DNA of 64,000 nt from IMGVR_UViG_3300034072_002211:1-64000, one strand, 5' to 3'. Counted from the first letter of the stretch, positions 11,401 through 56,418 are shown. A program made the numbers and translations. The notes: generated from the sequence alone by a model not told the origin.

Positions 11401-13574
11401 ACCACAGCGATGGCGATGGCCGTTGGACTTGGGACGTCTACACCTCAACCTCGAAGTATCAGGTTGCTAAGGCGCGTTCCACGATGAAGCTCAGCGAAGC
11501 ATTCTATGATGATTCGCGCGTGGAGTTTGGTCCTCGCCAGGTGGCAGCAATCCTAGGCGCAAGTGAAGCAACCCGTATCACACCAGAGAGGATTCAGGAA
11601 CTCGCAGACATCATCAACTATCGCGATGGTTCAAGCGAGATTGAGTTCATGCTGAACACCATGAAGACTATCCTTCTGAACACCCTTCAGAAGAACAGGC
11701 TCTTCTTTGGCATGGTCAAGAGCGCGTTTAAGCAGAGCCAGGTCGTTGACTGGGCATTCAAGACGTCGTTCCTCTACCTGGGCGGCTATTCGGAGACCCT
11801 GCGTCAGAGCCCAGTTGCCTTCAAGGATCAGATTGACAACGTCATTGCCTACTTGGAAGAGGTCAAGCCATACCACGTCAAGATTCGTGAGTATGTGCGC
11901 CGACTGAGCTATGGTCCTGACCTTGCTGATCTGGCAATCACTGACTTTGACAAGCCTGTCTATCCAGACGGTCAGCGCAATCGCGTTCTCGACGTTAAGA
12001 ACGAGAACGACCGCAACATCATGGGTATCAACCGTCCTTGGAAGGATTGGTTCGAGAACTATGAGAAGGCACCAACGCCACTGACCAAGTGGGATCTGGA
12101 GTGGAACGGCGTTCGCAAGATGAACGTGACCATGAAGTTCGACCGCATTTCTTGCGGCACGGTTCGTGGTTGGGATACGGCTCCTTGGGATCCACCACTT
12201 CTCGTCTACAGCCAGATTGGCAGCAATACGCAGAGCCTCAGTCAGCTGAATGCTCTCTACAGGAATGTGAACACCCAGGGTGAGCTCAACTACTTCCGCG
12301 ATCAGACTGTGGAAACCATTGAGGAACGCAACTTCCTGGTGCGTAAGGGCATCATTACACCAGACCGTCCAGGTTCGATTGTAACTGTCCTTCAGGAAGG
12401 CTCCCACTATATGTGGACCGGCAACGAGTGGATCAAGTTCGAGGCCATTGGCTGGGATCAGGATCCCGACATGGGCACCGCAACCCGCATCGAAGATGCT
12501 TACCGTCCTCTGCCTGGTATGACCCGTAAGGATGATCCAGGTGTGATTGCTGGTTGTGAATTTGACGGCACGGTGATGACTGACACGTTCCAATATGACG
12601 CTTGGGACATCTTCGAGTGGGATTCCACTGGCTACAGCCAGGGTATCCGTGAACGTGCTGGCTTCGATCAGGAAACTGTTGATGGCAACACTACTCCTGC
12701 TGATGAGAACGATCCTGCTTACGTGGGCATCACTGGCAATGAGTTCAGCCAGCCAGCAGTGAACGGCGCACGTCCTCATGAGCTGGTTCAGATCCGTGGC
12801 GTTGAAAGCGTTGTGATCAACGTCCGCAAGGCTTCTGGCCCTTACATGAAGAACTTCATGAACGCACAGGGCAAGTGGCAGGACACTCTGGTCAGTCAGA
12901 GCGAAATGACGTTTGTTTCCTGGGATCAGAGCGCCCACTCAGTGACCCTGACGGTGCCTAGCTGGACTGAGGATGCTCAGGGCTACACGCCGCTACATGA
13001 CCCTCAGAACCCTTCTACGGGCTTCATCAAGAATGTCATGTTGAGCAAGGGTTACAGGTCTTCAAGCAATGTGGACATGAGTGCCGCAGGAACCAAGACC
13101 TTCAAGCTTCGCGATCTCAGTGATATTGATGGTATTCCAGCTGGTCTGAGGGGCGACAATGTGAACGTTGCGGTTGTGAACACCAAGGATCCAACCAAGC
13201 GCGCAATTGGTGTTCTGTCAAACAGCAAGGGTAGCGAAAAGAACTGGGACGGTCAGGTCACTATCACGTTCTCAACGGGCTTCGTGAACCTTGGTTCGGG
13301 TAAGAGCTGGAACATCATCCCAGTTGATATGTTCAACGAACCAGGCATCGTGTGGGTAGGTGACGCACGCTTCACCTACAACAGCATGACCCGCAATGGT
13401 TCGACTGTGGTCCTCGAAAATGCCTACCTGTCAGCAAGCACCTTGGCACCACTGAACATCACTGAAGATGGTGTTTCGCTGGTCAAGACTTCGCCGGTGC
13501 TGGACGGCTCTATCCAGCGCAGGATGGCAAGCAACCATTCTGACGCAGTGCCTCACGGCCCTAACAGGCCGTGA
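2475..13574 (+). CDS. Giant virion structural protein (baseplate wedge/hub, 3699 aa)
   Basis: Uninterrupted 3699-aa ORF between gp6-like gene and fibre genes; ends with YLEEVKPYHVKIRE-type segment seen in jumbo-myophage baseplate proteins. Confidence 0.7.
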   Translation: MAKKTNRNPFAFTPIVLDQDNHEKRRVIKQLPAVHQTETLQKFFGASLDHLFDPGKGKPINGYVGQKPLWYDPDQDYYLEEGTDDRTFYQLEASMVSKNVEGQLTDLLPYPDLVNQLRFQGALTNNHNRLFSQDFYTWCPPIDLDKIVNFRQYVWLPIDDVAPTSTFEDGQTDGWILADGTPAPVSGPYSGINKFVGRFAGTPAGDQVVSKTFTLNSAITTANAQFDFLKLDSWDYAGGSAGVRERLVVYINDQVAFEFTPVGISGEGGLSLGSGTISLGDITGTYNVTSPGVDTHLGASATWTDRVYRVTVNLTGTGKTFKLGFGSTTNQAIDDESLGIDNVRVWQSSKTGIELNGPTHKSISPGTTKDYFLPGYGPTGDPELKKFYDLSILTDKLIHAEVDGVSRSFTYVPGQDKITFDQRPAADAEVSISVYSDLENNAIGLPNARPEAFGGVQLSSGMRVIITLDRNSDFKKSNVYIVEGVGSSIFLIKEEDWGAGAAPDYMVMARGAANRNEWSTRNRWFHVSTLPDNMDPDYVLKQRATRPIIEFNRDLELYNYGLRRRLDVDLVVENIEDLNGYMNQFPQDVTLGGVRITTRGTTLINVAAVNPRTGTTYGDVSSIRVMVRNTVNPLLNNNVLVLVNQGGALKLILETDGENPSGEPVYGEVFNVLLGSYSGKNLHWDGTNWVESQHKVKANQAPLFELYDLNGNSLRDEGLYPNSTFKGSRLFGYRIDTTGSRIADQALGLPLIHDNKGQIQFENYLSTETYQYVVGGKFLDIVGFYFHKVGNIDAELETLSNDWYKAPTQTRQFMVDRYVSDGRTKLFNISQNAQDITVTRGRVNESKSFERTTLVEDKDFIRVGRQIMIINIQLGDVIEIRTYSSENPPADAKGHYEVPLNLQANPDNAEVDFMTKGDFYDHFSEIMKKQAGFKGAEYSDNNFRDTPKAPNLGTHIIQHSAGLLKTMLLAGNSQLDITAAIRYADAEYARFKDKFQKKILSYTFTGRLANAENYDVWINTALDELNKGKTKHFAFYLSGMAQNESNRLPTFIPPTPSFLGVYPLYAPELISQEVEGADDVWFVRGHDGSLTLGENETCARVLHALELRIFDSVTATVRLRDRPACDFQEAYSDQYRTNEYSYEEYLQVLRPSFERWSVAYRQDYKVNDLSDTTIESKINRKANPWMWNWSSVPMANGQSVPGHWRGIYEKFYGTQRPDLTPWESLGFAIKPEWWDDRYGPAPYTSENLVLWDDLEQGYIHEGERRGINAKWARPGLQQFMPVDARGRLRHPGPRDLIAYNNVTADTDLSYIPDPTYFTEENGGGWFWKVENDTYLGDEVRGRFETKAEALADYVRSWEDRHDDGVLGCGICPQVPLYSDRAADWNFGDIGPVEQTWRRSSAFAFAAATAGYLMKPAKFVELGWNTQDIGLFFKNTPNEQWLNQDTKGRPQHRELQVHGEVLEDLSLVTKVGIQQWVSDLLASKNTAINENFATRVRGLGSQLSYKVAGFTDSQTLVAVTDAFGRVPSEDITISLYRSPSIREETYSGVAIEYTGRGYEIYGYDALNPYFSVMAPAIHAGRISVGDGAKSAAVPNWNPGTYYSVDITVKYQDNFYRSNKTHTSSSFFEPEFWTQVARPQYADGSTLLWYLEGELDPVAEKIAYGTVLKTPQDVADFLNGYQRYLESRGWIFENLGEDEQEVRDWKQALKSFITWSRADVRQPGDYITLSPSSKLVRFATDQGTIQPIEQIINGLYAIVDQNGQPIDSQATRVVRNDGNITVTCDASTSGIFGLRLYVSELEHVLVFNNKTIFGDTIYSPLLNIKQPRIRLQGFKTVGWKGRIDAPGFIVTGDRLTPNFERAADDFRRFFDIESMENKKLQDRARANFGYEEKEYLNNLLLTPTNQFEFYQGMIQQKGSSTSMRRLLRSNFIRHNKGLKLFEEWAFRVGDYGGQEVTPQLDIQIRQSEFKHNPQLIQFSNAVTPNTYGIIDVVDLNVGQDNRALDDRWHWRPDMKAIEWPLRDFGQGDAPLPTAGYVNLDEVRFTVATKAEFEDFFGQQEATDEPLEAGDRVWVYGIGSGKPEDSWMTYKFHDTGYNILNTFMPTFEGQGTVVQLDQNIKGYQNADTNPWNTTFYVAQPLLAGENDENGNAISGEMLVLKNLQDADVNPRTTYKPRVLGKAKLALTGTSGTTGFVMGFTPEAQQMIHRIKVIVDEPFAEGSTFELGYQNDLDAFVAIREEDQRDIYPTNYDNEAVLVQTPATSYMPPNVSTADVELIRVGRVSNFCAQTVVEWYWTRSDGSTANGSVTFLRPSDVVGDTDTDDAYLQTIQLPVTPSAMSGTLRVVTNGVQTDVQVLTFLRTNQAGINSVDLTRAATYEFSRAVGMSMYPWNTNTAGADREMIATLNSLGTQGSLRVEVDYFYVKGFELTEVLNGAVVPATSNVDGGTADVFTWIKTRYPSLNGISGALQDGDLIEVDSAHDTPGRWAVYKKVVSEWTIVRRQNRKINSDLLTSAGIFNSQENKLKLILQVYDPYKGFIPGVADRELEFKTFNDPAVYNDGRMIWGKEQVGKLWWDLSAVRYLDYEIYDSWKSNDHSGVNYRWKNWGRVAPNSSVDIYQWVRSPVAPNGWSDYVESKADLKIDNKPTGTVEEDAKYVTATEWNDDIQADETIYYFWVKNPTVVPTLPSRKLSAKQVSNILTDPAANDIPFFAVIDTNKVIVGGIKQFLNETDTVLKIKWLKDAEITNNHHKQWMILREEDERNTINDTLWNKMRDSLVGWDSTQKYVPDEKLPGAQQIGAMVRPRQSWFPADASPNGGQRPSRSARAAFVDCLNDILSEQPFIDQWYNWSEVFDKGENLPAPDRYITTALDLVDLRNLLPAARNMVQPGECVLIQNTAEAAGFWTLWKLVEIAGQRQFILEDFQKWRMQEGELWSLADWYADGWSAKNFPNYRFPTTAARDAAGNLDVTLLKGTLVQIDHSDGDGRWTWDVYTSTSKYQVAKARSTMKLSEAFYDDSRVEFGPRQVAAILGASEATRITPERIQELADIINYRDGSSEIEFMLNTMKTILLNTLQKNRLFFGMVKSAFKQSQVVDWAFKTSFLYLGGYSETLRQSPVAFKDQIDNVIAYLEEVKPYHVKIREYVRRLSYGPDLADLAITDFDKPVYPDGQRNRVLDVKNENDRNIMGINRPWKDWFENYEKAPTPLTKWDLEWNGVRKMNVTMKFDRISCGTVRGWDTAPWDPPLLVYSQIGSNTQSLSQLNALYRNVNTQGELNYFRDQTVETIEERNFLVRKGIITPDRPGSIVTVLQEGSHYMWTGNEWIKFEAIGWDQDPDMGTATRIEDAYRPLPGMTRKDDPGVIAGCEFDGTVMTDTFQYDAWDIFEWDSTGYSQGIRERAGFDQETVDGNTTPADENDPAYVGITGNEFSQPAVNGARPHELVQIRGVESVVINVRKASGPYMKNFMNAQGKWQDTLVSQSEMTFVSWDQSAHSVTLTVPSWTEDAQGYTPLHDPQNPSTGFIKNVMLSKGYRSSSNVDMSAAGTKTFKLRDLSDIDGIPAGLRGDNVNVAVVNTKDPTKRAIGVLSNSKGSEKNWDGQVTITFSTGFVNLGSGKSWNIIPVDMFNEPGIVWVGDARFTYNSMTRNGSTVVLENAYLSASTLAPLNITEDGVSLVKTSPVLDGSIQRRMASNHSDAVPHGPNRP

Positions 13575-22293: not shown

Positions 22294-23565
22294 TTAATGA
22301 TACTTAAAGTTTTGAACCACGAGTTCGTCGCCTTGGAAGAACACATCTGCGGAGGTTAGGCGACCACCCTTGCCGCTTCCTGTGTCCATGAAATATGCTA
22401 CACCTCCCTGGCTACCACGGACCAAAAGCGGCTTCACAGTGCTCCTAATGTCATGGCCGACCATGACCTGCTTGCCCTGTGGAATCCTATTCACCCACTC
22501 GTAAATGCGCGTGGGATAGCCGTCTGCCCTCTGGGGAGCCGTGTTGTCGACTTCACCAAAGAGCGCCATGGTCTCGAACTTGCCGGTCAAGCGAGCACTC
22601 GTGATGTCAAACATCTCAGGCTCAGCCGCGCCATGCGTGAAGAGAGTGTTGCCAATGATCCAATGGTGCCTAGAGAACCCTAGCAGGGCCCTGTAGCGCG
22701 TTTCGAACTTACGACGGGCGTCGGATGCTAGAGCTTCAATGGCCCTTGTAGTGACCTTGTTACCGTCACTGAGACGCACTCTTACGTCGTTGTGCTTGAC
22801 TTGTTCTAGCCAACGCTCAATCTTGCGCTCATGATTGCCAATGAGGCTGATGCCACGACCGCGCGTCACAATGCTGTAGACGTGATCCACACACTCAAGT
22901 GAATTGATACCATAATCCAGAATATCGCCCAGGAACACGCAGAAAAGCTTTCTCTGAGTTGCCCACTCGGTAGCATTCTTAAGCGGTTCAATCATACCAT
23001 GGACGTCGCCGACTACCATGATTCCGCGATAGCCACGGTTCTCAATGACCTTCTTGAGATCGATGTTGGTCAGTTTGCTGACAACCTCAAAATCCTCATT
23101 ACGAAAGTCAATGACGTTCGCAATACCATCACCCCTGAGAATATCACGCTCATTGGTGCGGAAAACATGCTCGTGCTTGGAGATTGTACCAGTAGCCGAA
23201 AGCCGCCAACTACGCTTGGCATCTGAGAGCTTGGTCTCCAGATTCCTATTACATACGATATAGAAAATGGGAACGCCAGTTCTCGAGCCAATATCGGCGA
23301 GACTCATACGATCCTTTTTGCGGAGATTGGTAGCATCGACGACCACGCGCTCGCCAAGCTCTAGCTTGAGCTGGGTGCGGCGATGAATCTCCTTGAACAC
23401 CACATCATTGATATCAAGACGCTGATAGTCTCCCGAGAGCTCATAGCGGATTTCTTCGCTGCTCATGATCTCATAGGGATCGAACTTCAAGCTAGTCAGG
23501 TGGGTCTTTCCGCCGCCCGCGGGGCCAACCATGATAACCAAACTATGGAGCGGAATTCTTTTCAT
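22294..23565 (-). CDS. pnkp: Polynucleotide kinase-phosphatase (P-loop kinase + metallophosphoesterase), no ligase domain
   Basis: GPAGGGKT P-loop, VVDATN; VGDVHG, LGDILDYG, GNHE, GHD, DTG phosphoesterase motifs as in bacterial Pnkp N-terminal two domains. Confidence 0.85.
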   Translation of the reverse strand: MKRIPLHSLVIMVGPAGGGKTHLTSLKFDPYEIMSSEEIRYELSGDYQRLDINDVVFKEIHRRTQLKLELGERVVVDATNLRKKDRMSLADIGSRTGVPIFYIVCNRNLETKLSDAKRSWRLSATGTISKHEHVFRTNERDILRGDGIANVIDFRNEDFEVVSKLTNIDLKKVIENRGYRGIMVVGDVHGMIEPLKNATEWATQRKLFCVFLGDILDYGINSLECVDHVYSIVTRGRGISLIGNHERKIERWLEQVKHNDVRVRLSDGNKVTTRAIEALASDARRKFETRYRALLGFSRHHWIIGNTLFTHGAAEPEMFDITSARLTGKFETMALFGEVDNTAPQRADGYPTRIYEWVNRIPQGKQVMVGHDIRSTVKPLLVRGSQGGVAYFMDTGSGKGGRLTSADVFFQGDELVVQNFKYH

Positions 23566-24880: not shown

Positions 24881-25200
24881 TACTGTGCTCCTCCGAAAGT
24901 AAGTTTGAAAAGGACCGCCAGGTCCTGCTTCTCGAAATACCAGCGATTACCGCCGCTGGTGTGCCAGTAGCTACCGGCGCGTTCCTCGCACCACTGCTTC
25001 ATTTCGGCCATCAGGGTGCTGTTGGGCTCCCTCAGGTCGACAGTGGTCATCTCCGGCCAGGCTTCCCGAAGGTGCCGTGACCAGTGCTTGTCTCGAGTGT
25101 TTGCGCCAATGGGTGGACAGAACTTGAGGCCCTGTTCCCGCCAGACCTTAAGGTAGGCCTGGGTAGCGAGGCTTTGTGCGGTTTTGAAATCCGTCGCCAT
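24880..25200 (-). CDS. Hypothetical protein, FxxxxDAxxFKL family
   Basis: EMKQWCEE...WYFEKQDLAVLFKLTFGG. Confidence 0.7.
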   Translation of the reverse strand: MATDFKTAQSLATQAYLKVWREQGLKFCPPIGANTRDKHWSRHLREAWPEMTTVDLREPNSTLMAEMKQWCEERAGSYWHTSGGNRWYFEKQDLAVLFKLTFGGAQ

Positions 25201-25658
25201 CAGTTGATCGCCGAGAATCGCTTGGTGATCGCATGGGCCTGCTCCTTGGTGCAGGGACCAATGCCGAGGGCGGTCACGATGGGGCTACCATCGAACGCGG
25301 TTCCTGGGATCACGTGGTTCTTGTCGATAATCAGCGAGGTGATCAGACCAGCAGCCTGGGCTTCTTCGTAAGCGCGCTGGAGAGCGGCTTCGTTCTTAGC
25401 CTTGAGGATGATCTGGGTGCCGATGAAGTCGGGGCCCTGATAGACCCGGAGCAACTCGGGATCGCGACGGCTCGCGAGGAGCACACAATTCTTGGCCGCG
25501 TGACAAGCCTGGCTTGCCATCTTACCCGGAGCCATGTCCAGGTCGCCGCGAATGATGCTGTAGATGCGAAGCTTTTCCGAGGCAGCTTCGAACGCCTCAT
25601 AGTCGTTGTCGTTGTCGTAACGAGCAGCGGCTTCCTACAGGAACGAATTGGTAAGCAT
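25200..25658 (-). CDS. pth2: Peptidyl-tRNA hydrolase type 2 (Pth2) with in-frame TAG at codon 8 (25635-25637); read-through or pseudogene
   Basis: LRIYSIIRGDLDMAPGKMASQACHA, IILKA, IID...T.LGIGP = Pth2 motifs; ATG 25658 preceded by AGGAG; translation MLTNSFL*EAAARYDNDNDYEAFEAASEKLRIYS... Confidence 0.85.
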
Positions 25659-25737
25659 TAAACTTCTCCTTCTCTTTTTGTCCAACATCGGACAACGCTC
25701 AACATAGGCACTCTTTTTCCTACGTCAACCGTTTTTC

Positions 25738-26106
25738 TTACCTCCAACGCAATTTGAACATCATTGCGTCTTTGCCATTCTCGAAAACCACACCCACGCT
25801 GGACGAGCAACCGCTGCTCCAGCCGACCTTTTTGAAGTCGCCGAACTTGACGTTCTCTTCCAACCAGGGAAGCATCTCAGAGAATGTTGAAGCAATAAAG
25901 CCTGTGATACGAACCAAATACCAACCGGGGTATTTGGCATTCACAGAATCAGCAAATTCGAGGTCAGGGAACTCATCCTCCTCGAACATACTGTTGAGCT
26001 TGGCCTCACCCAAGACACCATCGGTCTCAGGCTCTGCGAGGTCGTCGAACCACTCGTCGACATGCTCGTTATTGGGATTGTAATAGTAGGGGGTAAACGT
26101 CGTCAT
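25738..26106 (-). CDS. Hypothetical protein, FxxxxDAxxFKL family
   Basis: EMLPWLEEN...VVFENGKDAMMFKLRWR. Confidence 0.75.
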   Translation of the reverse strand: MTTFTPYYYNPNNEHVDEWFDDLAEPETDGVLGEAKLNSMFEEDEFPDLEFADSVNAKYPGWYLVRITGFIASTFSEMLPWLEENVKFGDFKKVGWSSGCSSSVGVVFENGKDAMMFKLRWR

Positions 26107-26172
26107 CTCTCATCTCACTCTTAAACCAAAATCACAGGGGACCTTGGGAGTGAGTGGAGGGGCTCGAGGGGC

Positions 26173-26196
26173 CTAGACGTGGATGTTGGTCTTCAT
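26173..26196 (-). CDS. Putative leader peptide MKTNIHV ending in TAG
   Basis: ATG 7 nt downstream of a TTGACT-N17-TATAAG promoter (26204-26232); followed by C-rich non-coding tract. Confidence 0.45.
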   Translation of the reverse strand: MKTNIHV

Positions 26197-26234
26197 GCTT
26201 CTACTTATACGCAGAAAGCGTGTGGAAGTCAAAA

Positions 26235-26675
26235 TTAGATCAATCCACGCTCATGGCACTCTTCGAGCACGCCACGATAGACGCGCATGTTGGGCTGATA
26301 CGGACCCCGGCCAAAATACTTGGCATCGTCCCCGTTGAGGGCCTTGTCGAGGGCCGCGCCAATGGCTGCGCTGCGGCACCGCCCCATGAGGCAGTGGATG
26401 TAGATGACGCTCACATCCTTGCTTTTCATGTCCTCCACGAAGTCGAGGACAGCTTCAGCATGGGTGGGATTGAACAGAATGCGAGCTTCCTCTTCGGGCT
26501 CACCATTCTTGTATTCGTCAATGTCATGGAACTTGAGGTTGAGCCTTCCAGTCAGGTGCTCGTTCTCATAGACCTCCGGAAAGTCACCTTTCTCGCAGAT
26601 GCTGATGAGCGCCCAAGGCTTGTCGGGCGGAGTTGCGGTCATCATGACCGCACGGCTGTAGACTACGAACTTCAT
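26235..26675 (-). CDS. Protein-tyrosine/dual-specificity phosphatase-like protein
   Basis: IYIHCLMGRCRSAAIG = HCxxGxxRS P-loop; ISI...LNLKFHDID. Confidence 0.85.
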   Translation of the reverse strand: MKFVVYSRAVMMTATPPDKPWALISICEKGDFPEVYENEHLTGRLNLKFHDIDEYKNGEPEEEARILFNPTHAEAVLDFVEDMKSKDVSVIYIHCLMGRCRSAAIGAALDKALNGDDAKYFGRGPYQPNMRVYRGVLEECHERGLI

Positions 26676-26705
26676 GTCACCAGTCTACAGCCTAGCACCA
26701 GTTTG

Positions 26706-26981
26706 TCAACCCTCGATGCTGGAGATCTCGATCTCCAGATAATAGTCTTCAGCCATCATCTGGAGAACTCCGCCTTCGATCCATGCTTCTTGGCGAGGAT
26801 CGAACTCAGCCCAATCCAGAGAAGCCGGCGACACTGTGACGGCCTTTCCTTTGTGGTGTTGGACGAAGAGATCCATGGGAGCGAAAGCCGGTGGATTCTC
26901 GGCATCACGAGCTCGATACTTGCGGGCGCTGTAGGTCTGGCCATTGACCAGCTTGTCAGCTAGATCTGAACCCTTGCTCAT
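26706..26981 (-). CDS. Hypothetical protein
   Basis: 91 aa; ATGA overlap with upstream synthetase-like gene. Confidence 0.65.
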   Translation of the reverse strand: MSKGSDLADKLVNGQTYSARKYRARDAENPPAFAPMDLFVQHHKGKAVTVSPASLDWAEFDPRQEAWIEGGVLQMMAEDYYLEIEISSIEG

Positions 26982-27796
26982 TCACTCGGCTCCCTGTTGA
27001 TGTCGTCACGCTGGGCCTGTTGCCAGTTGTAGACGCAACGGTCGAGGCCGATGGCAATCTCGAGCACGAGCGCATCCTTTTCGACCAGACCTTTCTTGCT
27101 CTGGAAAGCCAGCTTCTGAGGGAAATCAGTCCGCTTGCTGATGCTGCAGACTTCCATCCACTTGTCGCCGTTCCAGACCTCGACGTCCATGGTGCGGAGC
27201 GAATAAGCGGGCAGACGATCACTCTCCACAAGCCGCGTCGGCAAGTGAATCTGAGAAGCGATCATCTTGCGGACCTTCTCCAGCATCTCTTCCTGATAGT
27301 CGAGAGCTGTGTCGGCGCTGTAGACGCACTGAAACTCCTGCTGGTAGAATTCCTTGAGCCGCATGTGCTTGGTTGGCTGGACGATCTCGCGCCGGAAACT
27401 CTTACCGGCCTGCCAGACGCAGAAGGGCGGGAAGATGCTCAGTTGATTGTTGAGCAGGTATTGCGCGTAGGCGTAGCTGCCGGGCGTCGTTTCGGGCCGC
27501 AGAGCCAGTTCACGGTAGCCTTGCCGCGCCTGCGTCAGAGCCTCGAACTCTTCTTCAGTTTTGGCAGGAGCATCCACGTCTTCCTGAACCCAGATATCCT
27601 GTTCGGTATAGTTGACGTTGAGGAGGTCGCGCGGAGTCAGCAGCGGTGCTTCCACGAAGAAGAACTTCCACTGTGGGTTGAGGGCAACAAGGTCCCGCTG
27701 AACTGTCTGGGCGAAGAAGTCCCGGAAGTGTTCGCGGAGCCGGATCTCTTCCTCACTCCAGAAGATCAGGCCGTTGATGTCAAAGGTATTCTGCAT
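26978..27796 (-). CDS. Minimal class II aminoacyl-tRNA synthetase, GlyRS (alpha2-type)-like catalytic core without anticodon-binding domain
   Basis: LRPETT (GlyRS LRPETAQ), motif 2 QAGKSFRRE...MRLKEFYQQE, WMEVCSISKRTDF, motif 3 VLEIAIGLDR; ends about 15 aa after motif 3 (272 aa). Confidence 0.8.
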   Translation of the reverse strand: MQNTFDINGLIFWSEEEIRLREHFRDFFAQTVQRDLVALNPQWKFFFVEAPLLTPRDLLNVNYTEQDIWVQEDVDAPAKTEEEFEALTQARQGYRELALRPETTPGSYAYAQYLLNNQLSIFPPFCVWQAGKSFRREIVQPTKHMRLKEFYQQEFQCVYSADTALDYQEEMLEKVRKMIASQIHLPTRLVESDRLPAYSLRTMDVEVWNGDKWMEVCSISKRTDFPQKLAFQSKKGLVEKDALVLEIAIGLDRCVYNWQQAQRDDINREPSE

Positions 27797-27797
27797 G

Positions 27798-28178
27798 TCA
27801 GACCAACTTCATTGGCGTGGGCAGGGCAACGTAGGCGCCTGTCTTGGGATAACGGATGTGGGTTGCGGTGGTCGTCCCGTCCTCTTGGATCTCCACGCGG
27901 AAGTAGATCTCCAGCCCCGAATAGCGGAAGTTGTCGCTACAGCTTTCCGGGAGGTTGAGCTGGATGGCGTCATGATCCCGCGAGTCCTTGGTGGACCCTA
28001 CCTGATAGTCGTCCCAGATGATGGGAAACTTGGGCTTCTTGGCCTCTTCCTCACGGCGAGCCAGCTCAGCCTGCATCCGCTGGATCTGCCCCTGTAGGTC
28101 CTCGTCGCTCTTCCCGGCGAAAGGATCGCGCTTGGGCGCGGTATCGTCAATACCACCGGGAAGAGGAGAAATGCTCAT
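27798..28178 (-). CDS. Hypothetical protein
   Basis: Start reassigned to MSISPL (ATGA overlap at 28175-28178); stop 1 nt before synthetase ATG. Confidence 0.7.
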   Translation of the reverse strand: MSISPLPGGIDDTAPKRDPFAGKSDEDLQGQIQRMQAELARREEEAKKPKFPIIWDDYQVGSTKDSRDHDAIQLNLPESCSDNFRYSGLEIYFRVEIQEDGTTTATHIRYPKTGAYVALPTPMKLV

Positions 28179-28696
28179 TTGAATGCTCCAAGGGCAACGA
28201 GAATCAGACCTAGGATCACAGCCATAGTGCCAATAATCAGCGTGGGAAAGCTGATTCCTTTCTTCACGACCTGTGGTGCAGGTGGAGTTGGCTTGACCGG
28301 CTCGGGCTTGGGAACGCGAATGCCCAACGAACCACCCCAATCGAGATTGTCCCAGGGGATGCCACCCCGATTGTTGTTGCCCATACTGTGGCCGGTGCGG
28401 ATAAACAGGTTCTCCGAAGCGGCCCAAGCATCCAACTCACGCCACACCGCATTGTAGGGGCTCTGAGGGTTGCTATGGGAGTTCTTGTAGCCAGCATCCA
28501 GAGGAGCGGCAAAGAGATGCCGGATCTCTTTGGGAGCCAGGACGGGAGCATAGTCATTCCCGCCCTTGTCGATTTGTGTTGTCAGCGCGTTGAGGAGGTC
28601 CTCTTTGACAAACTTACGGAGCATGTCCGACCTGCGCGTCACTCGTTCCTGGCGGCGCAGTTCTTCAGTTTGCTTCAGTTGTTCACCAATCGACAC
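28175..28696 (-). CDS. Hypothetical C-terminally membrane-anchored protein
   Basis: GTG 28696 with GAGG RBS just downstream of tRNA; C-terminal TM LIIGTMAVILGLILVALG. Confidence 0.65.
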   Translation of the reverse strand: MSIGEQLKQTEELRRQERVTRRSDMLRKFVKEDLLNALTTQIDKGGNDYAPVLAPKEIRHLFAAPLDAGYKNSHSNPQSPYNAVWRELDAWAASENLFIRTGHSMGNNNRGGIPWDNLDWGGSLGIRVPKPEPVKPTPPAPQVVKKGISFPTLIIGTMAVILGLILVALGAFK

Positions 28697-28716
28697 TACA
28701 CTGACCTCACAAGTTT

Positions 28717-28792
28717 TGGCGCTCCCGGTGGGGCTCGAACCCACGACCCGCAGATTTAGAGTCCGCTGCTCTGCCAGCTGAGCTACGGGAGC
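28717..28792 (-). tRNA. Amber suppressor tRNA, anticodon CUA
   Basis: 76 nt: GCTCCCG-TA-GCTC-AGCTGGCA-GAGC-A-GCGGA-CTCTAAA-TCTGC-GGGTC-GTGGG-TTCGAGC-CCCAC-CGGGAGC-G-CCA; 7-bp acceptor, D-loop GG, U33, anticodon CTA at 28757-28759, encoded CCA. Confidence 0.95.
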
Positions 28793-28803
28793 ATGTAACC
28801 TGT

Positions 28804-29262
28804 TTAGGACTTTTTCTCCAAAGCGTCAAGCCGTGCGGCAATTTCCTGGACCAGTCGCAGCGTCTCCTCAGAGTTCTGCTTGATCTGCTCCTGCTCATCA
28901 TGAGTCCAGGCGTTGCTGTCTACGATCATGTGGGCGGCCAGCTTGGCCGTGATGATCGGTGCCACGAGGAAGGAGCAGATGTGCATGAAGATTGCGCCGA
29001 AGAATCGGCTGCTCGTGTGGGTTGGCGAATAGTCGCCATAGCCGACGGTGGTCGCCGTGACGCTGGCCCACCAGTAGCCCTCTGCGAGCTTCTTGCCCTC
29101 GATGAAGCTGAACATGACCGCTGCGAGGGTCATGATCAGTAGGTATGCGATCAACAGGCTGAATAACCGGTTGAACATCTTTTGCATCAGCGTGAGCTCT
29201 TGTCCCGCATGGACTGCGGTGCTCAGGATGTCGCTACCGGCTTGTTCGATCTGTCTACGCAT
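28804..29262 (-). CDS. Two-TM potassium channel (KcsA/Ion_trans_2-like)
   Basis: YWWASVTATTVGYGDYSP selectivity filter flanked by TM helices; GGAGG RBS. Confidence 0.9.
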   Translation of the reverse strand: MRRQIEQAGSDILSTAVHAGQELTLMQKMFNRLFSLLIAYLLIMTLAAVMFSFIEGKKLAEGYWWASVTATTVGYGDYSPTHTSSRFFGAIFMHICSFLVAPIITAKLAAHMIVDSNAWTHDEQEQIKQNSEETLRLVQEIAARLDALEKKS

Positions 29263-29360
29263 TTGTGCCTCCTTTCCTGAACCGTAACACAGGAGAGCAG
29301 CCTGTCAACAGAAAAGGGCGCCAGTTTCCTGACGCCCTTATAACCGTAGTGAGCTGTCGG

Positions 29361-29951: not shown

Positions 29952-31304
29952 TTAGGACTTCCTCCATTCGGTGCCGTGAACGCCATCGGCCAGCGTGATC
30001 CCCATATCAGTGAGCTGCTGACGGATCCTATCAGCCTCCCCGTAGTTTTTGGCCCTACGTGCCTCTTGACGAGCCGCAATTAGAGCCTCGACAGCCTCCT
30101 TGTCAACACCAAGTGTCCGCCATTGGTGCGGAGTATGGTTAAAGAGACCGAGAAACTGACCAGCCTTGATCAGTCGAGCCTTTGCGGGCGCCTTGTCCTT
30201 GGCATGGTCGAGGTCATCTGCGAGTCTATGGAGGACAGACAGAGCTGTGGTGGTATTGAGGTCCTGCGATAGCGCAGAGATGATCTCTGCTGGCACATCA
30301 ACGTCCTCGGCGTAGTTGAGCTCGTCGTGCCGATAGAGGACCTCATAGAGCCCGTCGAGGGCACGATGCGCCATGTCCAGCTTGTCCATAGTAAAGTCCA
30401 TGGGCGAGCGGTAATGTGACTGCATGAAGAGGTAACGAACGCTCTCCGCGGGATACTGATCGAAAAGCTCGTTCAAGAGGATCACGTTGCCGCGGCTCTT
30501 GCTCATCTTTTCGCCATTCACTGTCAGGAGACCGTTGTGTATCCAGTAGTTGGCAAGCGGAGCACCGTTGTGGTGGCACTGGCTCTGAGCGCACTCGGCT
30601 TCATGATGCGGAAAGCGCAGATCCTGACCACCACCGTGAATGTCGATTGTTGGACGTGCGAACGTGTGGTTGATCATGGCCGAGCATTCAATATGCCAAC
30701 CCGGCCGCCCCTGGCCCCAAGGCGAGAACCAGCTTGGCTCGCCCAGCTTTGCGGGTTTCCAGAGCACGAAATCTCTGGGGTCCTTTTTCTTGGGATCGAC
30801 CTCAACCCGTGAACCCGCTTCCGTGTGGGTGTGATTTGCGAGACCGGGATGGGGATTGCTGGGAACGTGGAAGAAAACCTCCCCGTCCACCGCATAGGCA
30901 TAGCCGTGATCGATCAGTGCGATGATCATGGCAATCATACCAGGAATGTGCTGGGTGGCCCTTGGTTCCACAGTGGGCGGCAAGCAAGCCAGAGCCTCGA
31001 GATCCATATGGTAGGCCGCGAGTGCCGTGTCAGTGATCTGGCTGATCGGAACACCGCGCTCGATTGATGCTGCGATGATCTTGTCATCCACGTCCGTGAT
31101 GTTGCGGACATAGCGGACTTCGCGCTCTCCGTAGACGTGGCGCAGAAGCCGGAAGACCTGGTCGAACACGATGGCTGGGCGCGCGTTACCGATATGCGCT
31201 GGCCCATAGACCGTTGGACCACAGACATACATAGCCACCTGCTGCGAAAACGCAGGCTTGAACTCTTCCACTTGGCGGCTCTGACTGTTGTAGAATGTGA
31301 TCAT
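29952..31304 (-). CDS. cysS: Cysteinyl-tRNA synthetase
   Basis: MYVCGPTVY, HIGN, NITDVDDKII, GRPGWHIECSAM, DIHGGGQDLRFPHHEAE, KMSKS, C-terminal ADRIRQQL...I.L.D. Confidence 0.97.
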   Translation of the reverse strand: MITFYNSQSRQVEEFKPAFSQQVAMYVCGPTVYGPAHIGNARPAIVFDQVFRLLRHVYGEREVRYVRNITDVDDKIIAASIERGVPISQITDTALAAYHMDLEALACLPPTVEPRATQHIPGMIAMIIALIDHGYAYAVDGEVFFHVPSNPHPGLANHTHTEAGSRVEVDPKKKDPRDFVLWKPAKLGEPSWFSPWGQGRPGWHIECSAMINHTFARPTIDIHGGGQDLRFPHHEAECAQSQCHHNGAPLANYWIHNGLLTVNGEKMSKSRGNVILLNELFDQYPAESVRYLFMQSHYRSPMDFTMDKLDMAHRALDGLYEVLYRHDELNYAEDVDVPAEIISALSQDLNTTTALSVLHRLADDLDHAKDKAPAKARLIKAGQFLGLFNHTPHQWRTLGVDKEAVEALIAARQEARRAKNYGEADRIRQQLTDMGITLADGVHGTEWRKS

Positions 31305-33488: not shown

Positions 33489-34691
33489 TCACTCGCTTAG
33501 ACTGTTGTCCCGGTAATCAGACCAGCTCGCCCCTCCCCAGAGGTGCCGCATGGCATTGACCTTGCTCTGACTACCAAGCTGCGAGCCCACAAACTTGATG
33601 ATGTTGGCGTAAACGCCTTCTTCGCCCTCGTCCAAACGATCCCAGGCAGTGAACTTGAAGCCCTGGAGACCATCATTGACCTTGGTCACCTTCTCCGCGA
33701 ACTTCTTCTTGCTGCCGTTGAGGTTGTCGAACTCAGCCTGGACTTCCCAGAAGATGTCACTGGCCAGCTTCTTCAACCCGGTGAAGATGGTCTTGGCGAA
33801 GTCGTCGCTAGCCTTGACTAGATCCTCGGGCAGGAAGGGCTTTGCATCATCCAGCTTCTCGTCCACAATGAGACGGATCACATCCTTCTCATGGGTCAAG
33901 TGCTCAAGCGTCTTGTGGAGTAGCGAATACCACTCGCCCTTCAACTTGAGCATGGTGCCATCGGGCCAACGCAGAACGTCGCCTTCTTCACCCTCGATTG
34001 CTCGGATCTCTTCAATCATCTCCTCGTCCAGGCCATCCTGGAGAGAAGAGAACGAGCAGCAAGGAATGCCATAAGCGGCTGCTTCTTCCTTGAGCTCAGG
34101 TGCATCCATGTATTCACCGGTGGTGTTGTCACGGATTGCGGTGAGAACCAGCTGAGTCACAGGATAGTCGATGACGATCCGCTGAATACGAGAGCACCAC
34201 TCAAAGATTGGAGTCTTGCCTTGGCTCATCCAATACTTGCAGAACTCGTGATACTCAACACGGTCCTTGGCCCACTCGTCAACGGGCGCAGCCACGCCAG
34301 TGAGGCCCATCTTAGTGCAGAAGCGCACCTGACCCTTGATCAACAGAGGCGTGATCATAGATCCGTCTAGCTTCTTGAAGCGACGGTAGGGCTTGGACCA
34401 GTCCACATTCTCAGGAAGCGTTTCGTTGCGCTCACCGAGGTTGAAGAACTTGTGATACTTGCGAGCAAGGACCTTGCCAGTGGCCGTGTCAAACGTGATG
34501 CCGCGGCATTCACGCAGGAGCGCCGTCCGGCGATCGGTCACAGGTGGGAAGGTGTCCTCGAAGTTGACCAGATAGTTGACGACCGTGTAGCCGTGCTCTT
34601 CGTCAACCTTGACCACGAACTCTTCACGGCCCTCAATGGCCTCAAGGATTTCACTCAAGTGAGTGATCGTGGGAAACTGATAGTGAGTCAT
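33489..34691 (-). CDS. rnl1: RNA ligase 1 (T4 Rnl1-like)
   Basis: ECRGITFD...KYHKFFNLGE, motif I KLDGS, IFEWCS, EGDV, LKLKGEWY. Confidence 0.9.
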   Translation of the reverse strand: MTHYQFPTITHLSEILEAIEGREEFVVKVDEEHGYTVVNYLVNFEDTFPPVTDRRTALLRECRGITFDTATGKVLARKYHKFFNLGERNETLPENVDWSKPYRRFKKLDGSMITPLLIKGQVRFCTKMGLTGVAAPVDEWAKDRVEYHEFCKYWMSQGKTPIFEWCSRIQRIVIDYPVTQLVLTAIRDNTTGEYMDAPELKEEAAAYGIPCCSFSSLQDGLDEEMIEEIRAIEGEEGDVLRWPDGTMLKLKGEWYSLLHKTLEHLTHEKDVIRLIVDEKLDDAKPFLPEDLVKASDDFAKTIFTGLKKLASDIFWEVQAEFDNLNGSKKKFAEKVTKVNDGLQGFKFTAWDRLDEGEEGVYANIIKFVGSQLGSQSKVNAMRHLWGGASWSDYRDNSLSE

Positions 34692-42020: not shown

Positions 42021-42896
42021 CTACTTAGTAGCAACCTCGATTTGAGTCAAGGTAAAGGGTGGATTTTCCCTCGGATAGCCCCGAGCGTTATTGGCATAAA
42101 TCACACCATCAATCTCGGTCATCTTCCGCGTGTGAGTGTGACCATAGATCCAGTAACGAATCTTGTTGTTCACATCCGCATCAAGAACTTGCGACAAGGC
42201 GGTGTTCACGTAGCTGGGAGTCAGCGCATTCCAGACCGTGTTGCCGGGCTTCCACTCCATGATGTCAGCACGTGGGCTCATATGGGTAGCAACCACAATA
42301 CTCTCAATGGCATCGTCCTCACTGGCCAGCTTTACCTGGGATGCTAAGTTGATTGCCTGCTCAGCAGCAAGGCTTTCGGGGCTCTTGAGGTCGAAGTTGG
42401 GATAGCGGGAGTCATTGGAATACTGAACCCACGCGCGCTTGGCCGTGAAGTCAGGAATACCAGCCGTCTCATAGGCCTTGAAATCATACCAGCCCACCGC
42501 TCCAAAGAATGCTACCCCATCCACGAGCAAGCCAGTGTCATGCTTGAGGTGGTAGACGTTTGGATACTTGGCGAGTAGCTGAGTGAAGAAGGCATTGCCC
42601 TGATCTACCGTCATATCATTCTGGTAGTGATCATGGTTGCCTTCCACGACGACCACATACTCATATTCTTCCGCTGCCGCAGCAACCACCTGCCAGCTGG
42701 TCATCATGGTGTTCGCAATATCACCTGCGATCACTAGAACACGGCTGTCTGGGTTCTTAAACTGGCGCCAGTCAATGTAATAGAACATGGACTTGAAAGG
42801 CTCACCGGCCCACATGCGACGCTCAGGGTCGTGAAGCTGAGTCTTGCCGAACCAAGCATCCACGTGGAGGTCAGAGCAGAAATCAATCTTCATCAT
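42021..42896 (-). CDS. Metallophosphoesterase
   Basis: SDLHVD, IAGDI, VEGNHDHY, THMSP, YGHTH. Confidence 0.9.
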   Translation of the reverse strand: MMKIDFCSDLHVDAWFGKTQLHDPERRMWAGEPFKSMFYYIDWRQFKNPDSRVLVIAGDIANTMMTSWQVVAAAAEEYEYVVVVEGNHDHYQNDMTVDQGNAFFTQLLAKYPNVYHLKHDTGLLVDGVAFFGAVGWYDFKAYETAGIPDFTAKRAWVQYSNDSRYPNFDLKSPESLAAEQAINLASQVKLASEDDAIESIVVATHMSPRADIMEWKPGNTVWNALTPSYVNTALSQVLDADVNNKIRYWIYGHTHTRKMTEIDGVIYANNARGYPRENPPFTLTQIEVATK

Positions 42897-56006: not shown

Positions 56007-56418
56007 ATGATCCCTCCGCACCAAGTCGCCTGCGAATCTCAGCATCACTGATTGCGGCAACATTCCACACTGAGGCAAAATATCGCGCATCTTTGGTGCT
56101 TGTAAAGAAGAGGATCACGTCAGTGCCTTGCTGAACACCTGGACGCTTTTTGATCCTGAGCGCGTATTTCTTATAGACCATATTGCGCTGCTTGAGCCAA
56201 CGAGTGATCTCAGGGTTAACTCGCATTGTCCAGTTGCCATTGCCTGGATATTCGGGATTGTTGGATTCCCAACGCCAATGCTCACGACGCTTTAGGACAA
56301 CACCTACATCCAGGAAAGCTTGAACAGGATTGCCTGCTTTCTGTCGTGAACGTGAAGCATAGCGTTGAGTCCGCCTGTTGGCGTTAACGTGTAGGCCACC
56401 CTGTTCAACACCAACCAC
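55981..56418 (-). CDS. Hypothetical protein, FKL family (true start uncertain, likely downstream of tracked start)
   Basis: VNPEITRWLKQ...LFFTSTKDARYF. Confidence 0.5.
   Translation of the reverse strand: MVGVEQGGLHVNANRRTQRYASRSRQKAGNPVQAFLDVGVVLKRREHWRWESNNPEYPGNGNWTMRVNPEITRWLKQRNMVYKKYALRIKKRPGVQQGTDVILFFTSTKDARYFASVWNVAAISDAEIRRRLGAEGSYAHSSYQV

What the first reader, a model, noticed from the sequence alone, without database searches (positions are those of the whole stretch)
25200..29305. Candidate conditional amber read-through system: suppressor tRNA(CUA) + anticodon-blind GlyRS-like enzyme + amber-interrupted Pth2 + amber-terminated leader
Seen: four TAG-related elements within about 4 kb. 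(1) A perfect 76-nt tRNA with CUA anticodon (28717-28792). (2) A 272-aa class II synthetase core with no anticodon-binding domain (26978-27796) in the same apparent transcript (promoter about 29305, K+ channel, tRNA, then overlap-coupled ORFs to the synthetase). (3) A Pth2 gene with TAG at codon 8. (4) A promoter-proximal uORF also with TAG at codon 8. The genome is not globally recoded: long genes contain no TAG and only three called genes (42021, 51903, 56304) stop with TAG. Inference: the phage uses amber suppression as a timing or stress switch, producing Pth2 (and perhaps relieving polarity downstream of the uORF) only once the suppressor tRNA is made and charged, possibly by its own synthetase that ignores the anticodon. 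Caveat: TAG is also the rarest stop in many hosts, so scarcity alone is weak evidence.
Basis: partly seen in the sequence, partly recalled or inferred. Interest (0 to 1): 0.92.

Follow-up and report, generated by a model that had tools for sequence, protein, structure and literature searches.

The report
Suppressor-tRNA-gated gene switch in a phage
A giant soil phage carries its own amber-suppressor tRNA and two nearby genes that can only be switched on when that tRNA reads a built-in UAG stop, one of them through a ribosome-stalling leader peptide, which looks like a natural version of the amber-codon switches that synthetic biologists build.

Summary

- **The suppressor tRNA.** tRNA(CUA) lies at 28717-28792 (-).
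- **The Pth2 gene.** It starts with SD+ATG (25658), has TAG at codon 8, and continues in frame. Without read-through the first beta strand of the fold is lost. More than 20 related jumbo-phage contigs keep ATG + 2-8 codons + in-frame TAG.
- **Covariation.** Agrobacterium phage Atu_ph07 has TGA at the same place, and its only suppressor tRNA is UCA. Stop codon and suppressor anticodon therefore covary.
- **The promoter-proximal "uORF" (26196).** This is an amber-gated ribosome-arrest leader: a leaderless M-x6-TAG followed by A-P-R-A-P-P.
  - In 15 distinct relatives the residues after the TAG keep R-(A/G/S/D)-P-P while using all six Arg codons, so the TAG is translated. RxPP is the published, EF-P-refractory arrest core.
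  - The RNA under a ribosome stalled there pairs with the ribosome-binding site of the next gene (X, unknown function).
- **Best model.** The suppressor tRNA reads both TAGs. It turns on X by stalling-induced RBS unmasking, and Pth2 directly.
- **Not supported.** There is no good evidence that the GlyRS-like mini-synthetase charges this tRNA. The genome is not globally recoded.

There is no experimental evidence yet.

The parts
28717..28792 (-). Amber suppressor tRNA, anticodon CUA, discriminator G73, CCA encoded. It lies 11 nt after the K+ channel stop codon.
   Evidence: ARAGORN; Rfam RF00005 at 64 bits. 13 distinct orthologues keep the D arm, the CUCUAAA anticodon loop and the T loop, while the stems change in a compensatory way.
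28804..29308 (-). Probable transcription unit start: TTGACA (29308-29303) after a terminator-like hairpin (29339-29314), then a 152-aa K+ channel-like gene (29262-28804) directly upstream of the tRNA.
   Evidence: Sequence; Ion_trans_2 E 1.6e-10; terminator-like site. The promoter assignment is by eye; the -10 is weak.
26978..27796 (-). 272-aa GlyRS-like class IIa catalytic core without an anticodon-binding domain. It is linked to the tRNA, but a functional tie is not shown.
   Evidence: Invariant motifs RPET, SFRxE, FxQxE, RxDF and ExxxGxDR.
26204..26232 (-). Sigma-70-type promoter TTGACT-N17-TATAAG. The -10 ends 7 nt before the leader ATG, which implies a leaderless mRNA.
   Evidence: The same -35/-10 with 6-7 nt to the ATG is found in all relatives, while the spacers differ.
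26110..26196 (-). Amber-gated arrest leader: MKTNIHV, TAG (26175-26173), then APRAPPL... to TGA (26112-26110). The RAPP codons are at 26166-26155.
   Evidence: 15 distinct homologous leaders all have TAG followed by R-(A/G/S/D)-P-P. All six Arg codons are used, and variable sites fall 2/3/11 by codon position.
26107..26159 (-). Hairpin. The 5' arm starts in the Pro-Pro codons (CUCCACUCACUC...). The 3' arm is the ribosome-binding site of gene X (GAGUGAG..AUG..GAG).
   Evidence: Part of the MFE fold in all 10 leaders folded. Footprint segment against RBS duplex: mean -13.7 vs -6.1 kcal/mol for controls, and 16 of 17 fall in the best 5%. Some compensatory pairs.
25738..26106 (-). Gene X (122 aa), the gene behind the arrest leader. 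Acidic N-terminus plus a conserved C-terminal alpha/beta domain. Function unknown.
   Evidence: 90 homologues, all unnamed and without Pfam hits, on jumbo-phage-size contigs. No family hit. Model pLDDT about 80-89 in the C-terminal domain; no PDB fold match.
25680..25728 (-). pth2 promoter TTGACG-N16-TATGTT (25728-25701) and a small conserved 5'-UTR hairpin GUCC-GAUGUU-GGAC (25693-25680).
   Evidence: Promoter scan. The hairpin is kept with compensatory changes in relatives. Its role is unknown.
25200..25658 (-). Amber-interrupted peptidyl-tRNA hydrolase Pth2: MLTNSFL, TAG (25637-25635), then 144 residues.
   Evidence: An in-frame stop 2-8 codons after SD+ATG is kept in every clade member seen: 13 distinct TAG leaders, and 1 TGA leader in two Atu_ph07-like phages.

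Best explanation
The phage encodes an amber suppressor tRNA that acts as the trans-acting inducer of a small set of stop-gated genes next to it.

Element 1 is a leaderless mini-ORF.
- Without the tRNA, ribosomes terminate at UAG after 7 codons, and the downstream hairpin keeps the ribosome-binding site of gene X closed.
- With the charged tRNA, the ribosome reads UAG, makes A-P-R-A-P, and stalls with Pro-tRNA in the A site. This is the RxPP arrest, which EF-P does not relieve.
- The stalled ribosome sits on the 5' arm of the hairpin, so the RBS of X is freed. One read-through event can then license many initiations, which amplifies the signal.

Element 2 is pth2 itself. UAG at codon 8 must be read to make a Pth2 that contains its first beta strand.

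Output at both elements should follow the ratio of charged suppressor to RF1.

Shown by sequence and comparison: the elements exist, the UAG is translated, stop and anticodon covary, and the anti-RBS pairing is present.

Inferred: that stalling happens, that it opens the RBS, which amino acid is inserted, and the purpose. I favour coupling a translation-maintenance module (Pth2, X) to the presence and activity of the suppressor, either as a delay timer after infection or to match peptidyl-tRNA recycling to the load created by suppression and by the arrest leader.
For: **The UAG is translated.**
- After the leader TAG, R-x-P-P is kept in 15 distinct leaders using Arg codons CGA, CGG, CGC, CGT, AGA and AGG, four Ala codons and all four Pro codons. 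There is no start codon between the TAG and the motif.
- In 7 gapless leaders the variable sites are 2/3/11 by codon position across the TAG (binomial p 0.004).
- In pth2, the leader (M[LI][TSI]NSFL) and the 23-50 codons after the stop both change synonymously, and protein similarity extends upstream of the first ATG in Phosso and Atu_ph07.

**Link to the tRNA.**
- tRNA(CUA) lies 2.3-4.9 kb upstream in the window, in 7 further IMG/VR relatives, in Phosso and in several metagenome contigs.
- Atu_ph07 and a second Atu-like phage have TGA in pth2 and TGA before a Pro-Pro-stop anti-RBS element. The only suppressor of Atu_ph07 is UCA, and it is of unrelated sequence.

**Arrest motif.**
- RAPP and RGPP are the most robust arrest cores and are refractory to EF-P. 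RSPP and RDPP are partly permissive. These are exactly the four variants seen here (PMC12992588).
- The stall has RAP in the P site and Pro-tRNA in the A site. It works in ApdP of Sinorhizobium (PMC10951233).

**RNA switch.**

**TAG avoided at gene ends.**. The TAG-ending genes have a second stop 2-3 codons later.
Against: - There is no experimental datum: no stall, no read-through product, no charging assay.
- A simple occlusion model opens the RBS only modestly (mean unpaired probability 0.45 free, 0.48 with a ribosome at TAG, 0.58 stalled) and not in every leader.
- Alignment-based covariation of the hairpin is weak, because the arms shift register.
- The nascent chain at the stall is only 13-14 residues long. 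Published RxPP arrests were studied in longer chains.
- The TGA/UCA counterpart rests on one lineage. Its leader has K-P-P-stop rather than RxPP.
- Atu_ph07 does not avoid TGA at gene ends (267 of 714; PMC6102473).
- Two contigs with both TAG elements (L029, L030) show no tRNA(CUA) within 7 kb, and the rest of those contigs was not seen.
- The purpose of the gating is not derived from data.
Confidence: 0.65

Rival explanations
1. One reading: as above, but the suppressor is charged by the phage's own anticodon-blind GlyRS-like mini-synthetase. The switch then reports expression of a phage-private tRNA/synthetase pair, and glycine is inserted at UAG.
For: - The mini-synthetase lies 0.1-1.2 kb downstream of the tRNA in the window and in about 12 further contigs that carry a pth2-linked CUA tRNA.
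- Its catalytic motifs, including the GlyRS-type RPET, QxE and ExxxGxDR, are invariant.
- The CUA tRNAs next to it have G73 in 12 of 13. Three of the four distinct copies away from it have A73; the G73 copy in L039 is the exception.
Against: - The same enzyme family sits beside tRNA-Gly arrays (LR745206, LR756504), beside tRNA-Ser(GCU) (XbC2), or beside no tRNA (Brevundimonas and Caulobacter phages).
- Atu_ph07 has the opal system but no homologue.
- L039 and L042 carry CUA tRNAs with no mini-synthetase within 6 kb.
- Acceptor stems vary freely (G1-C72 or C1-G72), and G73 is not the bacterial Gly discriminator (own knowledge).
- The linkage among close relatives may be plain synteny.
Confidence: 0.2
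2. The UAGs sense release factor 1 rather than the phage tRNA. Read-through by near-cognate host tRNAs rises when RF1 is limiting, and the phage tRNA has another purpose.
For: UAG is read only by RF1 (own knowledge). The arrest leader would amplify rare read-through. L029 and L030 show no tRNA nearby.
Against: - Stop identity follows the phage's suppressor anticodon: TAG with CUA, TGA with UCA.
- The tRNA is tightly linked to the gated genes in most contigs.
- TAG depletion at gene ends fits efficient suppression.
Confidence: 0.08
3. Nothing is read through. The short ORFs are ordinary terminated uORFs, pth2 is a decaying or N-terminally shortened gene (or starts at a non-canonical codon), and the TAGs are coincidence or assembly error.
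For: Annotators of Phosso and Atu_ph07 called pth2 from the internal ATG. Standard gene callers do the same.
Against: - The same in-frame stop is found in three sequenced isolates and more than 20 independent metagenome assemblies.
- Amino-acid-level conservation holds on both sides of the stops.
- No conserved start codon lies after the stop.
- The internal ATG is the family's conserved Met inside the fold, and starting there deletes beta-1.
Confidence: 0.04
4. The phage uses a reassigned genetic code (TAG as a sense codon throughout, code-15-like), and these are just two of many recoded sites.
For: Phage-encoded tRNA(CUA) is typical of recoded phages (preprint 10.1101/2021.08.26.457843; PMC13037316).
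Against: In 64 kb only pth2 and the leader carry a translated TAG. Long genes (3699, 996 and 774 aa) have none. Coding density is normal with the standard code.
Confidence: 0.03

Closest known systems
RAPP-type ribosome arrest peptides (ApdA, ApdP, ApcA; SecM with RAGP)
   Same: A small upstream ORF with an R-x-P-P core. The stall has R-A-P in the P site and Pro-tRNA in the A site. The downstream gene's RBS is held in a hairpin that the stalled ribosome would open. Such arrests work in alpha-proteobacteria (ApdP of Sinorhizobium) (PMC10951233, PMC12992588, PMC7897499).
   Different: Here the arrest motif lies behind an in-frame UAG, so it is reached only by suppression. The leader is 7-8 residues plus the gate, is leaderless, and has no signal or membrane segment, so release by Sec/YidC pulling is not possible. 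The regulated gene is not a protein-localisation factor. The element is phage-encoded.
Stop-codon recoding in phages with suppressor tRNAs (code 15 / code 4 phages; crAss-like, Lak, jumbo phages)
   Same: A phage-encoded tRNA(CUA) or tRNA(UCA) reads a stop codon inside phage genes. A role in timing of expression has been proposed (10.1101/2021.08.26.457843; PMC9523058; PMC13037316).
   Different: Those phages carry the stop in many, mostly late or structural, genes. Here the code is standard, TAG is avoided at gene ends, and only two regulatory positions a few codons after a start are gated.
prfB (RF2) autoregulation and TnaC (own knowledge)
   Same: An in-frame stop early in a translation-factor gene, or a leader, makes expression depend on how that stop is decoded. 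Pth2 is also a translation-quality factor.
   Different: prfB uses a +1 frameshift and senses its own product. TnaC stalls at the stop itself. Here a dedicated tRNA reads the stop, and no feedback from Pth2 is evident.
Leader-peptide attenuation and T-box control (own knowledge)
   Same: Translation of a short leader, or direct tRNA binding, reports on a particular tRNA and remodels a downstream RNA structure.
   Different: Classical attenuation senses lack of a charged tRNA. Here the presence of an extra tRNA lets the ribosome advance into an arrest site.
Engineered amber-codon translational switches (review PMC6412442)
   Same: UAG placed near the start of a target or leader, with an orthogonal suppressor tRNA as the inducer.
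   Different: Those are man-made. This would be a natural counterpart with an added arrest-peptide amplifier.

Membership tests
RxPP (RAPP-like) ribosome arrest peptides | R-x-P-P core (x = A or G strongest; S or D permissive) at the stall site | tested here: met
   Window APRAPP. Relatives have RAPP, RGPP, RSPP or RDPP in all 15 distinct leaders. Motif rules come from PMC12992588.
RxPP (RAPP-like) ribosome arrest peptides | Small ORF directly upstream of, and co-oriented with, a regulated gene whose RBS is sequestered in RNA structure overlapped by the stalled ribosome | tested here: met
   The hairpin is in all MFE folds. Footprint-RBS duplex is -13.7 vs -6.1 kcal/mol, with 16 of 17 in the best 5%. 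The occlusion model gives only a modest effect.
RxPP (RAPP-like) ribosome arrest peptides | Demonstrated elongation arrest (toeprint, stable peptidyl-tRNA) | not testable with these tools
   Needs in vitro translation.
RxPP (RAPP-like) ribosome arrest peptides | Monitoring-substrate design: N-terminal signal or TM segment so that Sec/YidC pulling releases the arrest | tested here: not met
   Only 7-8 polar residues precede the gate (MKTNIHV, MKKILTHH). There is no hydrophobic segment.
Phage stop-codon reassignment (code 15-like) | Phage-encoded suppressor tRNA matching the reassigned stop | tested here: met
Phage stop-codon reassignment (code 15-like) | Many genes interrupted by the reassigned stop; fragmented ORFs under the standard code | tested here: not met
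   One CDS and one leader in 64 kb.
Pth2 (PF01981 / TIGR00283) | Whole-domain HMM match above the curated cut-off | tested here: met
   Pfam 74.8 bits against a cut-off of 23, HMM positions 3-113 of 115. Below the NCBIfam equivalog cut-offs (64 vs 126; 55 vs 82). PDB 1q7s E 1e-9.
Pth2 (PF01981 / TIGR00283) | Uninterrupted ORF encoding beta-1 from a start codon | tested here: not met
   Beta-1 lies between the TAG and the first canonical start codon. The domain is complete only by read-through.
Dimeric (alpha2) glycyl-tRNA synthetase | Class II motifs 2 and 3 and GlyRS signature residues | tested here: met
Dimeric (alpha2) glycyl-tRNA synthetase | C-terminal anticodon-binding domain; equivalog score | tested here: not met
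   The protein ends after motif 3. NF003211 scores 61 bits against a cut-off of 312.
tRNA-Pyl (ARAGORN's label) | Atypical tRNAPyl architecture and pyl genes | tested here: not met
   Canonical D loop with GG, 5-nt variable loop, 5-bp anticodon stem. No PylS-like match; the best hits of the neighbouring enzyme are GlyRS, SerRS and ProRS. The criteria for tRNAPyl are from my own knowledge.

The most novel reading that the evidence does not exclude
The suppressor tRNA is a dedicated regulatory RNA that defines a small 'amber regulon' in Atu_ph07/Phosso-like jumbo phages. The RxPP leader acts as a built-in amplifier. The G73 class of CUA tRNAs forms a private, anticodon-independent pair with the adjacent mini GlyRS-like enzyme. 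This would be a natural orthogonal tRNA/synthetase/amber-switch system that evolved at least twice (CUA/TAG and UCA/TGA).
Probability: 0.2. Interest if true: 0.95.

Novelty: new variant of a known kind. Interest (0 to 1): 0.86.

Why it matters
Phage suppressor tRNAs have so far been read either as codon-usage helpers or as signs of whole-genome recoding. Here a phage with a standard code seems to use one as an inducer for a few genes. The arrest-peptide leader converts rare read-through into gene activation.

If true, this would:
- give arrest peptides a new kind of input, a tRNA;
- explain "orphan" suppressor tRNAs in jumbo phages such as Atu_ph07, Phosso and AP-J-162;
- correct the annotation of a family of mis-started pth2 genes;
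- offer natural parts for amber-based genetic switches.

It is directly testable with culturable phages and simple reporters.

Tried and rejected
- **Assembly error or pseudogene:** rejected by conservation in isolates and metagenomes.
- **Global recoding:** rejected.
- **A search for the RxPP-after-stop pattern** in the other jumbo-phage loci (XbC2, LR745206, LR756504, Domovoi, CcrSC) and elsewhere in the window found nothing.
- **XacN1**, which has a tRNA-Sup, has a normally started pth2 of another lineage. The gate is therefore clade-specific and not a general property of suppressor-bearing phages.
- **Function of gene X:** no result from Pfam, NCBIfam, PHROGs, a 5.8-billion-protein search or a PDB fold search.
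- **Identity of the tRNA.** Among 38 phage tRNAs at hand, the body is closest to Phosso tRNA-Lys(UUU). No tRNA-Trp of a relative was compared. BLAST neighbours are a mix of Thr, Lys, Asn and Arg. The amino acid remains open. From my own knowledge, Lys via host LysRS is a reasonable guess.
- **Alignment-based covariation of the hairpin:** only weak, because MAFFT shifts the 3' arm.
- **Rfam:** no family for either leader.
- **Not done:** a scan of host genomes for the parent tRNA (an exact-pattern scan on a generic D arm would not discriminate isotypes), and whole-genome tRNA and TAG surveys of the 277-480 kb contigs (only flanks are retrievable).

Full report
**What is there.**

The window comes from a jumbo phage. 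It is identical to IMG/VR contig 3300034072_002211 (277 kb). Its nearest sequenced relatives are Sinorhizobium phage Phosso (469 kb) and Agrobacterium phage Atu_ph07 (490 kb).

On the minus strand the region reads as follows:
- CysRS
- a membrane protein
- a terminator-like hairpin
- TTGACA promoter
- K+ channel-like gene
- tRNA(CUA)
- two small ORFs
- the 272-aa class II core
- a 91-aa ORF
- a promoter
- a phosphatase-like gene
- a promoter
- mini-ORF
- gene X (122 aa)
- a promoter
- pth2

The wider window also holds a T4 Rnl1-like RNA ligase, a Pnkp-like AAA_33+Metallophos protein and a truncated class I synthetase. This is a translation and tRNA-maintenance neighbourhood.

- The tRNA is a high-scoring canonical tRNA with anticodon CUA.
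- The class II core is closest to dimeric GlyRS, keeps all catalytic motifs, and lacks an anticodon-binding domain.
- pth2 has a strong SD, ATG 25658 and TAG at codon 8, and then 144 in-frame codons.
  - The Pth2 domain begins 10 residues before the first canonical start codon that follows the TAG.
  - A protein started at that ATG would therefore lack beta-1.
- The second TAG-at-codon-8 element is at 26196. It lies 7 nt after the -10 of a good sigma-70-type promoter.
- Rough gene calls give TAA 39, TGA 31, TAG 1.
  - TAG is 16 of 69 among the first in-frame stops upstream of genes, so TAG is specifically avoided as a terminator.
- No other gene in the window shows coding signal across a TAG.

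**pth2 is gated by a stop in a whole clade, and the stop matches the phage's suppressor.**

- Phosso has SD-ATG-AAG-TAT-TAG in frame with its annotated pth2. It also has a syntenic tRNA(CUA).
- Eight IMG/VR contigs (87-100% identical Pth2) keep M[LI][TSI]NSFL-TAG with synonymous changes inside the leader. Each has one tRNA(CUA) upstream.
- More distant metagenome and IMG/VR relatives (57-84%) have other short leaders: MSY, MTYN, MKY, MDFT, MSEFT, MTAFT, MTM, MKTEFL. Every one is followed by an in-frame TAG and the Pth2 N-terminus.
- Unrelated Pth2 lineages start normally (L037, L038 and XacN1).
- Atu_ph07 and a second Atu-like phage have MIGEHF-TGA at the same place.
  - The Atu_ph07 paper reports 33 tRNAs with exactly one suppressor, anticodon UCA (PMC6102473).
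  - I located it at L019:34714-34788.
  - It is not homologous to the CUA family. The stop/anticodon match therefore arose by separate recruitment.
- The published annotations start pth2 at the internal Met, and none of the three jumbo-phage papers I read (Atu_ph07, AP-J-162, the 2026 jumbo-phage survey) links it to the suppressor.

**The "uORF" is an amber-gated arrest peptide.**

- All relatives with enough upstream DNA have the same element. It consists of a promoter with 6-7 nt between the -10 and the ATG, 5-8 sense codons, and TAG.
- The conserved part continues after the TAG:
  - APRAPPL
  - APRGPPL
  - AQRAPPL
  - VQRGPPP
  - LHRSRSPP(F/L)
  - HHPSQARDPPF
- Across 15 distinct leaders the Arg is invariant while all six Arg codons occur. 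Ala and Pro codons also turn over. No start codon lies between the TAG and the motif.
- In seven gapless leaders the variable sites are 2, 3 and 11 at codon positions 1, 2 and 3.
- The frame is therefore translated through the TAG, and the peptide matters.
- R-x-P-P is the published arrest core.
  - RAPP and RGPP give the most robust arrest and are refractory to EF-P.
  - RSPP and RDPP are partly permissive, and all are strongly avoided in proteomes (PMC12992588).
  - The ribosome stalls with R-A-P on the P-site tRNA and Pro-tRNA in the A site. ApdP of Sinorhizobium is a natural example (PMC10951233).
- Only one such motif-after-mini-ORF exists in the window.

**RNA switch.**

- In all ten leaders folded, the minimum-energy structure contains a hairpin whose 5' arm starts in the Pro-Pro codons. 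Its 3' arm is the purine-rich ribosome-binding site and start region of gene X.
  - The paired sequences differ between lineages: CUCACUC/GAGUGAG, CCUCCA/UGGAGG, CGUUCUCC/GGAGAACG.
- I compared the 25 nt a stalled ribosome would cover (-9 to +15 from the P-site Pro codon) with the RBS.
  - They pair at a mean of -13.7 kcal/mol, against -6.1 for other 25-mers of the same loci.
  - 16 of 17 are in the best 5% (16-nt version).
- The segment under a ribosome terminating at the TAG pairs only weakly (-6.6). It ends before the arm.
- A partition-function model with occluded footprints opens the RBS only modestly, and alignment covariation is weak. I therefore rate the switch as well motivated but unproven.
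- In the Atu-like phages an upstream gene ends ...KMK-TGA-IVFKPP-TAG, and CCUCCAUAG is the 5' arm of the hairpin that sequesters the RBS of X. This is an opal-gated variant that would park a ribosome at a Pro-Pro-stop.

**What the gate controls.**

- Gene X has 90 homologues. All are unnamed and have no Pfam domains, and they lie on contigs of up to 480 kb.
- Its C-terminal alpha/beta domain is modelled with fair confidence but matches no solved fold.
- In a distant relative (L042/L043) the X homologue is itself interrupted (MTYY-TAG, in frame) and sits 1.5 kb from a tRNA(CUA). "ATG, a few codons, TAG" is thus a recurring device in these phages.

**The mini-synthetase.**

- It is a conserved, probably active GlyRS-like core.
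- Its family is spread over jumbo phages of Xanthomonas, Brevundimonas and Caulobacter and two 630-kb metagenomic phages. There it lies beside tRNA-Ser(GCU), tRNA-Gly arrays, or no tRNA.
- Atu_ph07 lacks it.
- CUA tRNAs occur without it nearby.
- One lead in its favour: the CUA tRNAs adjacent to it carry G73 in 12 of 13, whereas three of the four distinct copies elsewhere carry A73.
- The acceptor stems are otherwise unconserved.

**Which amino acid.**

This is unknown. The tRNA body is closest to a phage tRNA-Lys among those at hand.

From my own knowledge:
- U35 is the main LysRS determinant.
- LysRS and GlnRS are the usual mischargers of amber suppressors.
- Rhizobial hosts generally lack GlnRS.

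Lys is therefore a reasonable guess, held with low confidence.

**Mechanism and purpose.**

- Shown: the elements, their conservation, translation through the stops, stop/anticodon covariation, and anti-RBS pairing.
- Inferred: suppression efficiency set by tRNA against RF1; RxPP stalling on a 13-14-residue chain; RBS unmasking.
- Speculative: the gate delays or conditions a translation-maintenance module on the presence of a working suppressor.
  - Pth2 may be needed to recycle peptidyl-tRNA shed from read-through and from the arrest leader itself.

**Novelty.**

Searches of the paper library found nothing that links a suppressor tRNA to an arrest peptide or to pth2. The closest natural systems are RAPP arrest peptides and phage stop-codon recoding. 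The closest in logic are engineered amber switches (PMC6412442).

I class it as a new variant that combines two known kinds. Interest is high because the comparative evidence is strong and the tests are simple.

Noticed in passing
L017:12001-12076; L039:9032-9183; L042:7921-7994; window 28717-28792: There are two discriminator classes of phage tRNA(CUA). G73 is found in 12 of 13 copies next to the mini class II synthetase. A73 is found in three of the four distinct copies located elsewhere. Phosso and L039 carry one of each; in L039 they are in tandem.
   Followed up: partly
L042:5900-6460 (also L043): A distant homologue of gene X is itself amber-interrupted: TTGACA-N17-TATAAA, then ATG ACC TAC TAT TAG in frame with the protein. 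A tRNA(CUA) lies 1.5 kb downstream.
   Followed up: partly
L002:5041-5126 and L040 (Atu_ph07-like): An opal-gated variant. The upstream 53-aa CDS ends KMK-TGA and is followed by IVFKPP-TAG. CCUCCAUAG forms the 5' arm of a hairpin that covers the RBS of the X homologue.
   Followed up: partly
window 25680-25693 (-): A small hairpin GUCC-GAUGUU-GGAC in the pth2 5' UTR. It is kept in relatives with compensatory changes. It does not cover the SD, and its role is unknown.
   Followed up: no
window 26173-26181 (-) and homologous leaders: His at position -2 before the gating TAG is invariant in all 15 distinct arrest leaders (THH, IHV, THL, THY ...). It may tune termination against suppression, or it may contact the exit tunnel.
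   Followed up: no
window 57945-59333 (-): A 462-aa class I synthetase of the Ile/Leu/Val/Met type with an anticodon-binding domain but only part of the catalytic domain. With the full CysRS at 29952-31304, this makes a third synthetase-like gene in the window.
   Followed up: no
window 33489-34691 (-) and 22294-23565 (-): A T4 Rnl1-like RNA ligase and an AAA_33+Metallophos (Pnkp-like) protein flank the module. This suggests a tRNA-repair set like the T4 answer to anticodon nucleases.
   Followed up: no
window 2475-13574 (+): A 3699-aa ORF with strong coding signal and no Pfam match. It contains no TAG.
   Followed up: no
window 42021-42896 (-); 56304-56418 (-): The few genes that end in TAG have a second, different stop 2-3 codons later (TGA, TAA), as expected if TAG is leaky in this phage.
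   Followed up: partly
L003:3699-8079; L005:5113-5889; L004:5893-5980: In other jumbo phages the mini GlyRS-like gene sits inside or beside tRNA arrays. These include tRNA-Gly(UCC/GCC), or tRNA-Ser(GCU) directly upstream.
   Followed up: partly
L018:43484-44191 (Atu_ph07): The gene annotated as 'threonyl-tRNA synthetase' (235 aa) matches only the tRNA_SAD editing-type domain. It may be a free-standing trans-editing factor.
   Followed up: no
L001 and L002 annotations: The deposited pth2 CDSs of Phosso and Atu_ph07 start at the internal conserved Met, 21-23 codons inside the region of protein similarity. These annotations are probably too short.
   Followed up: yes
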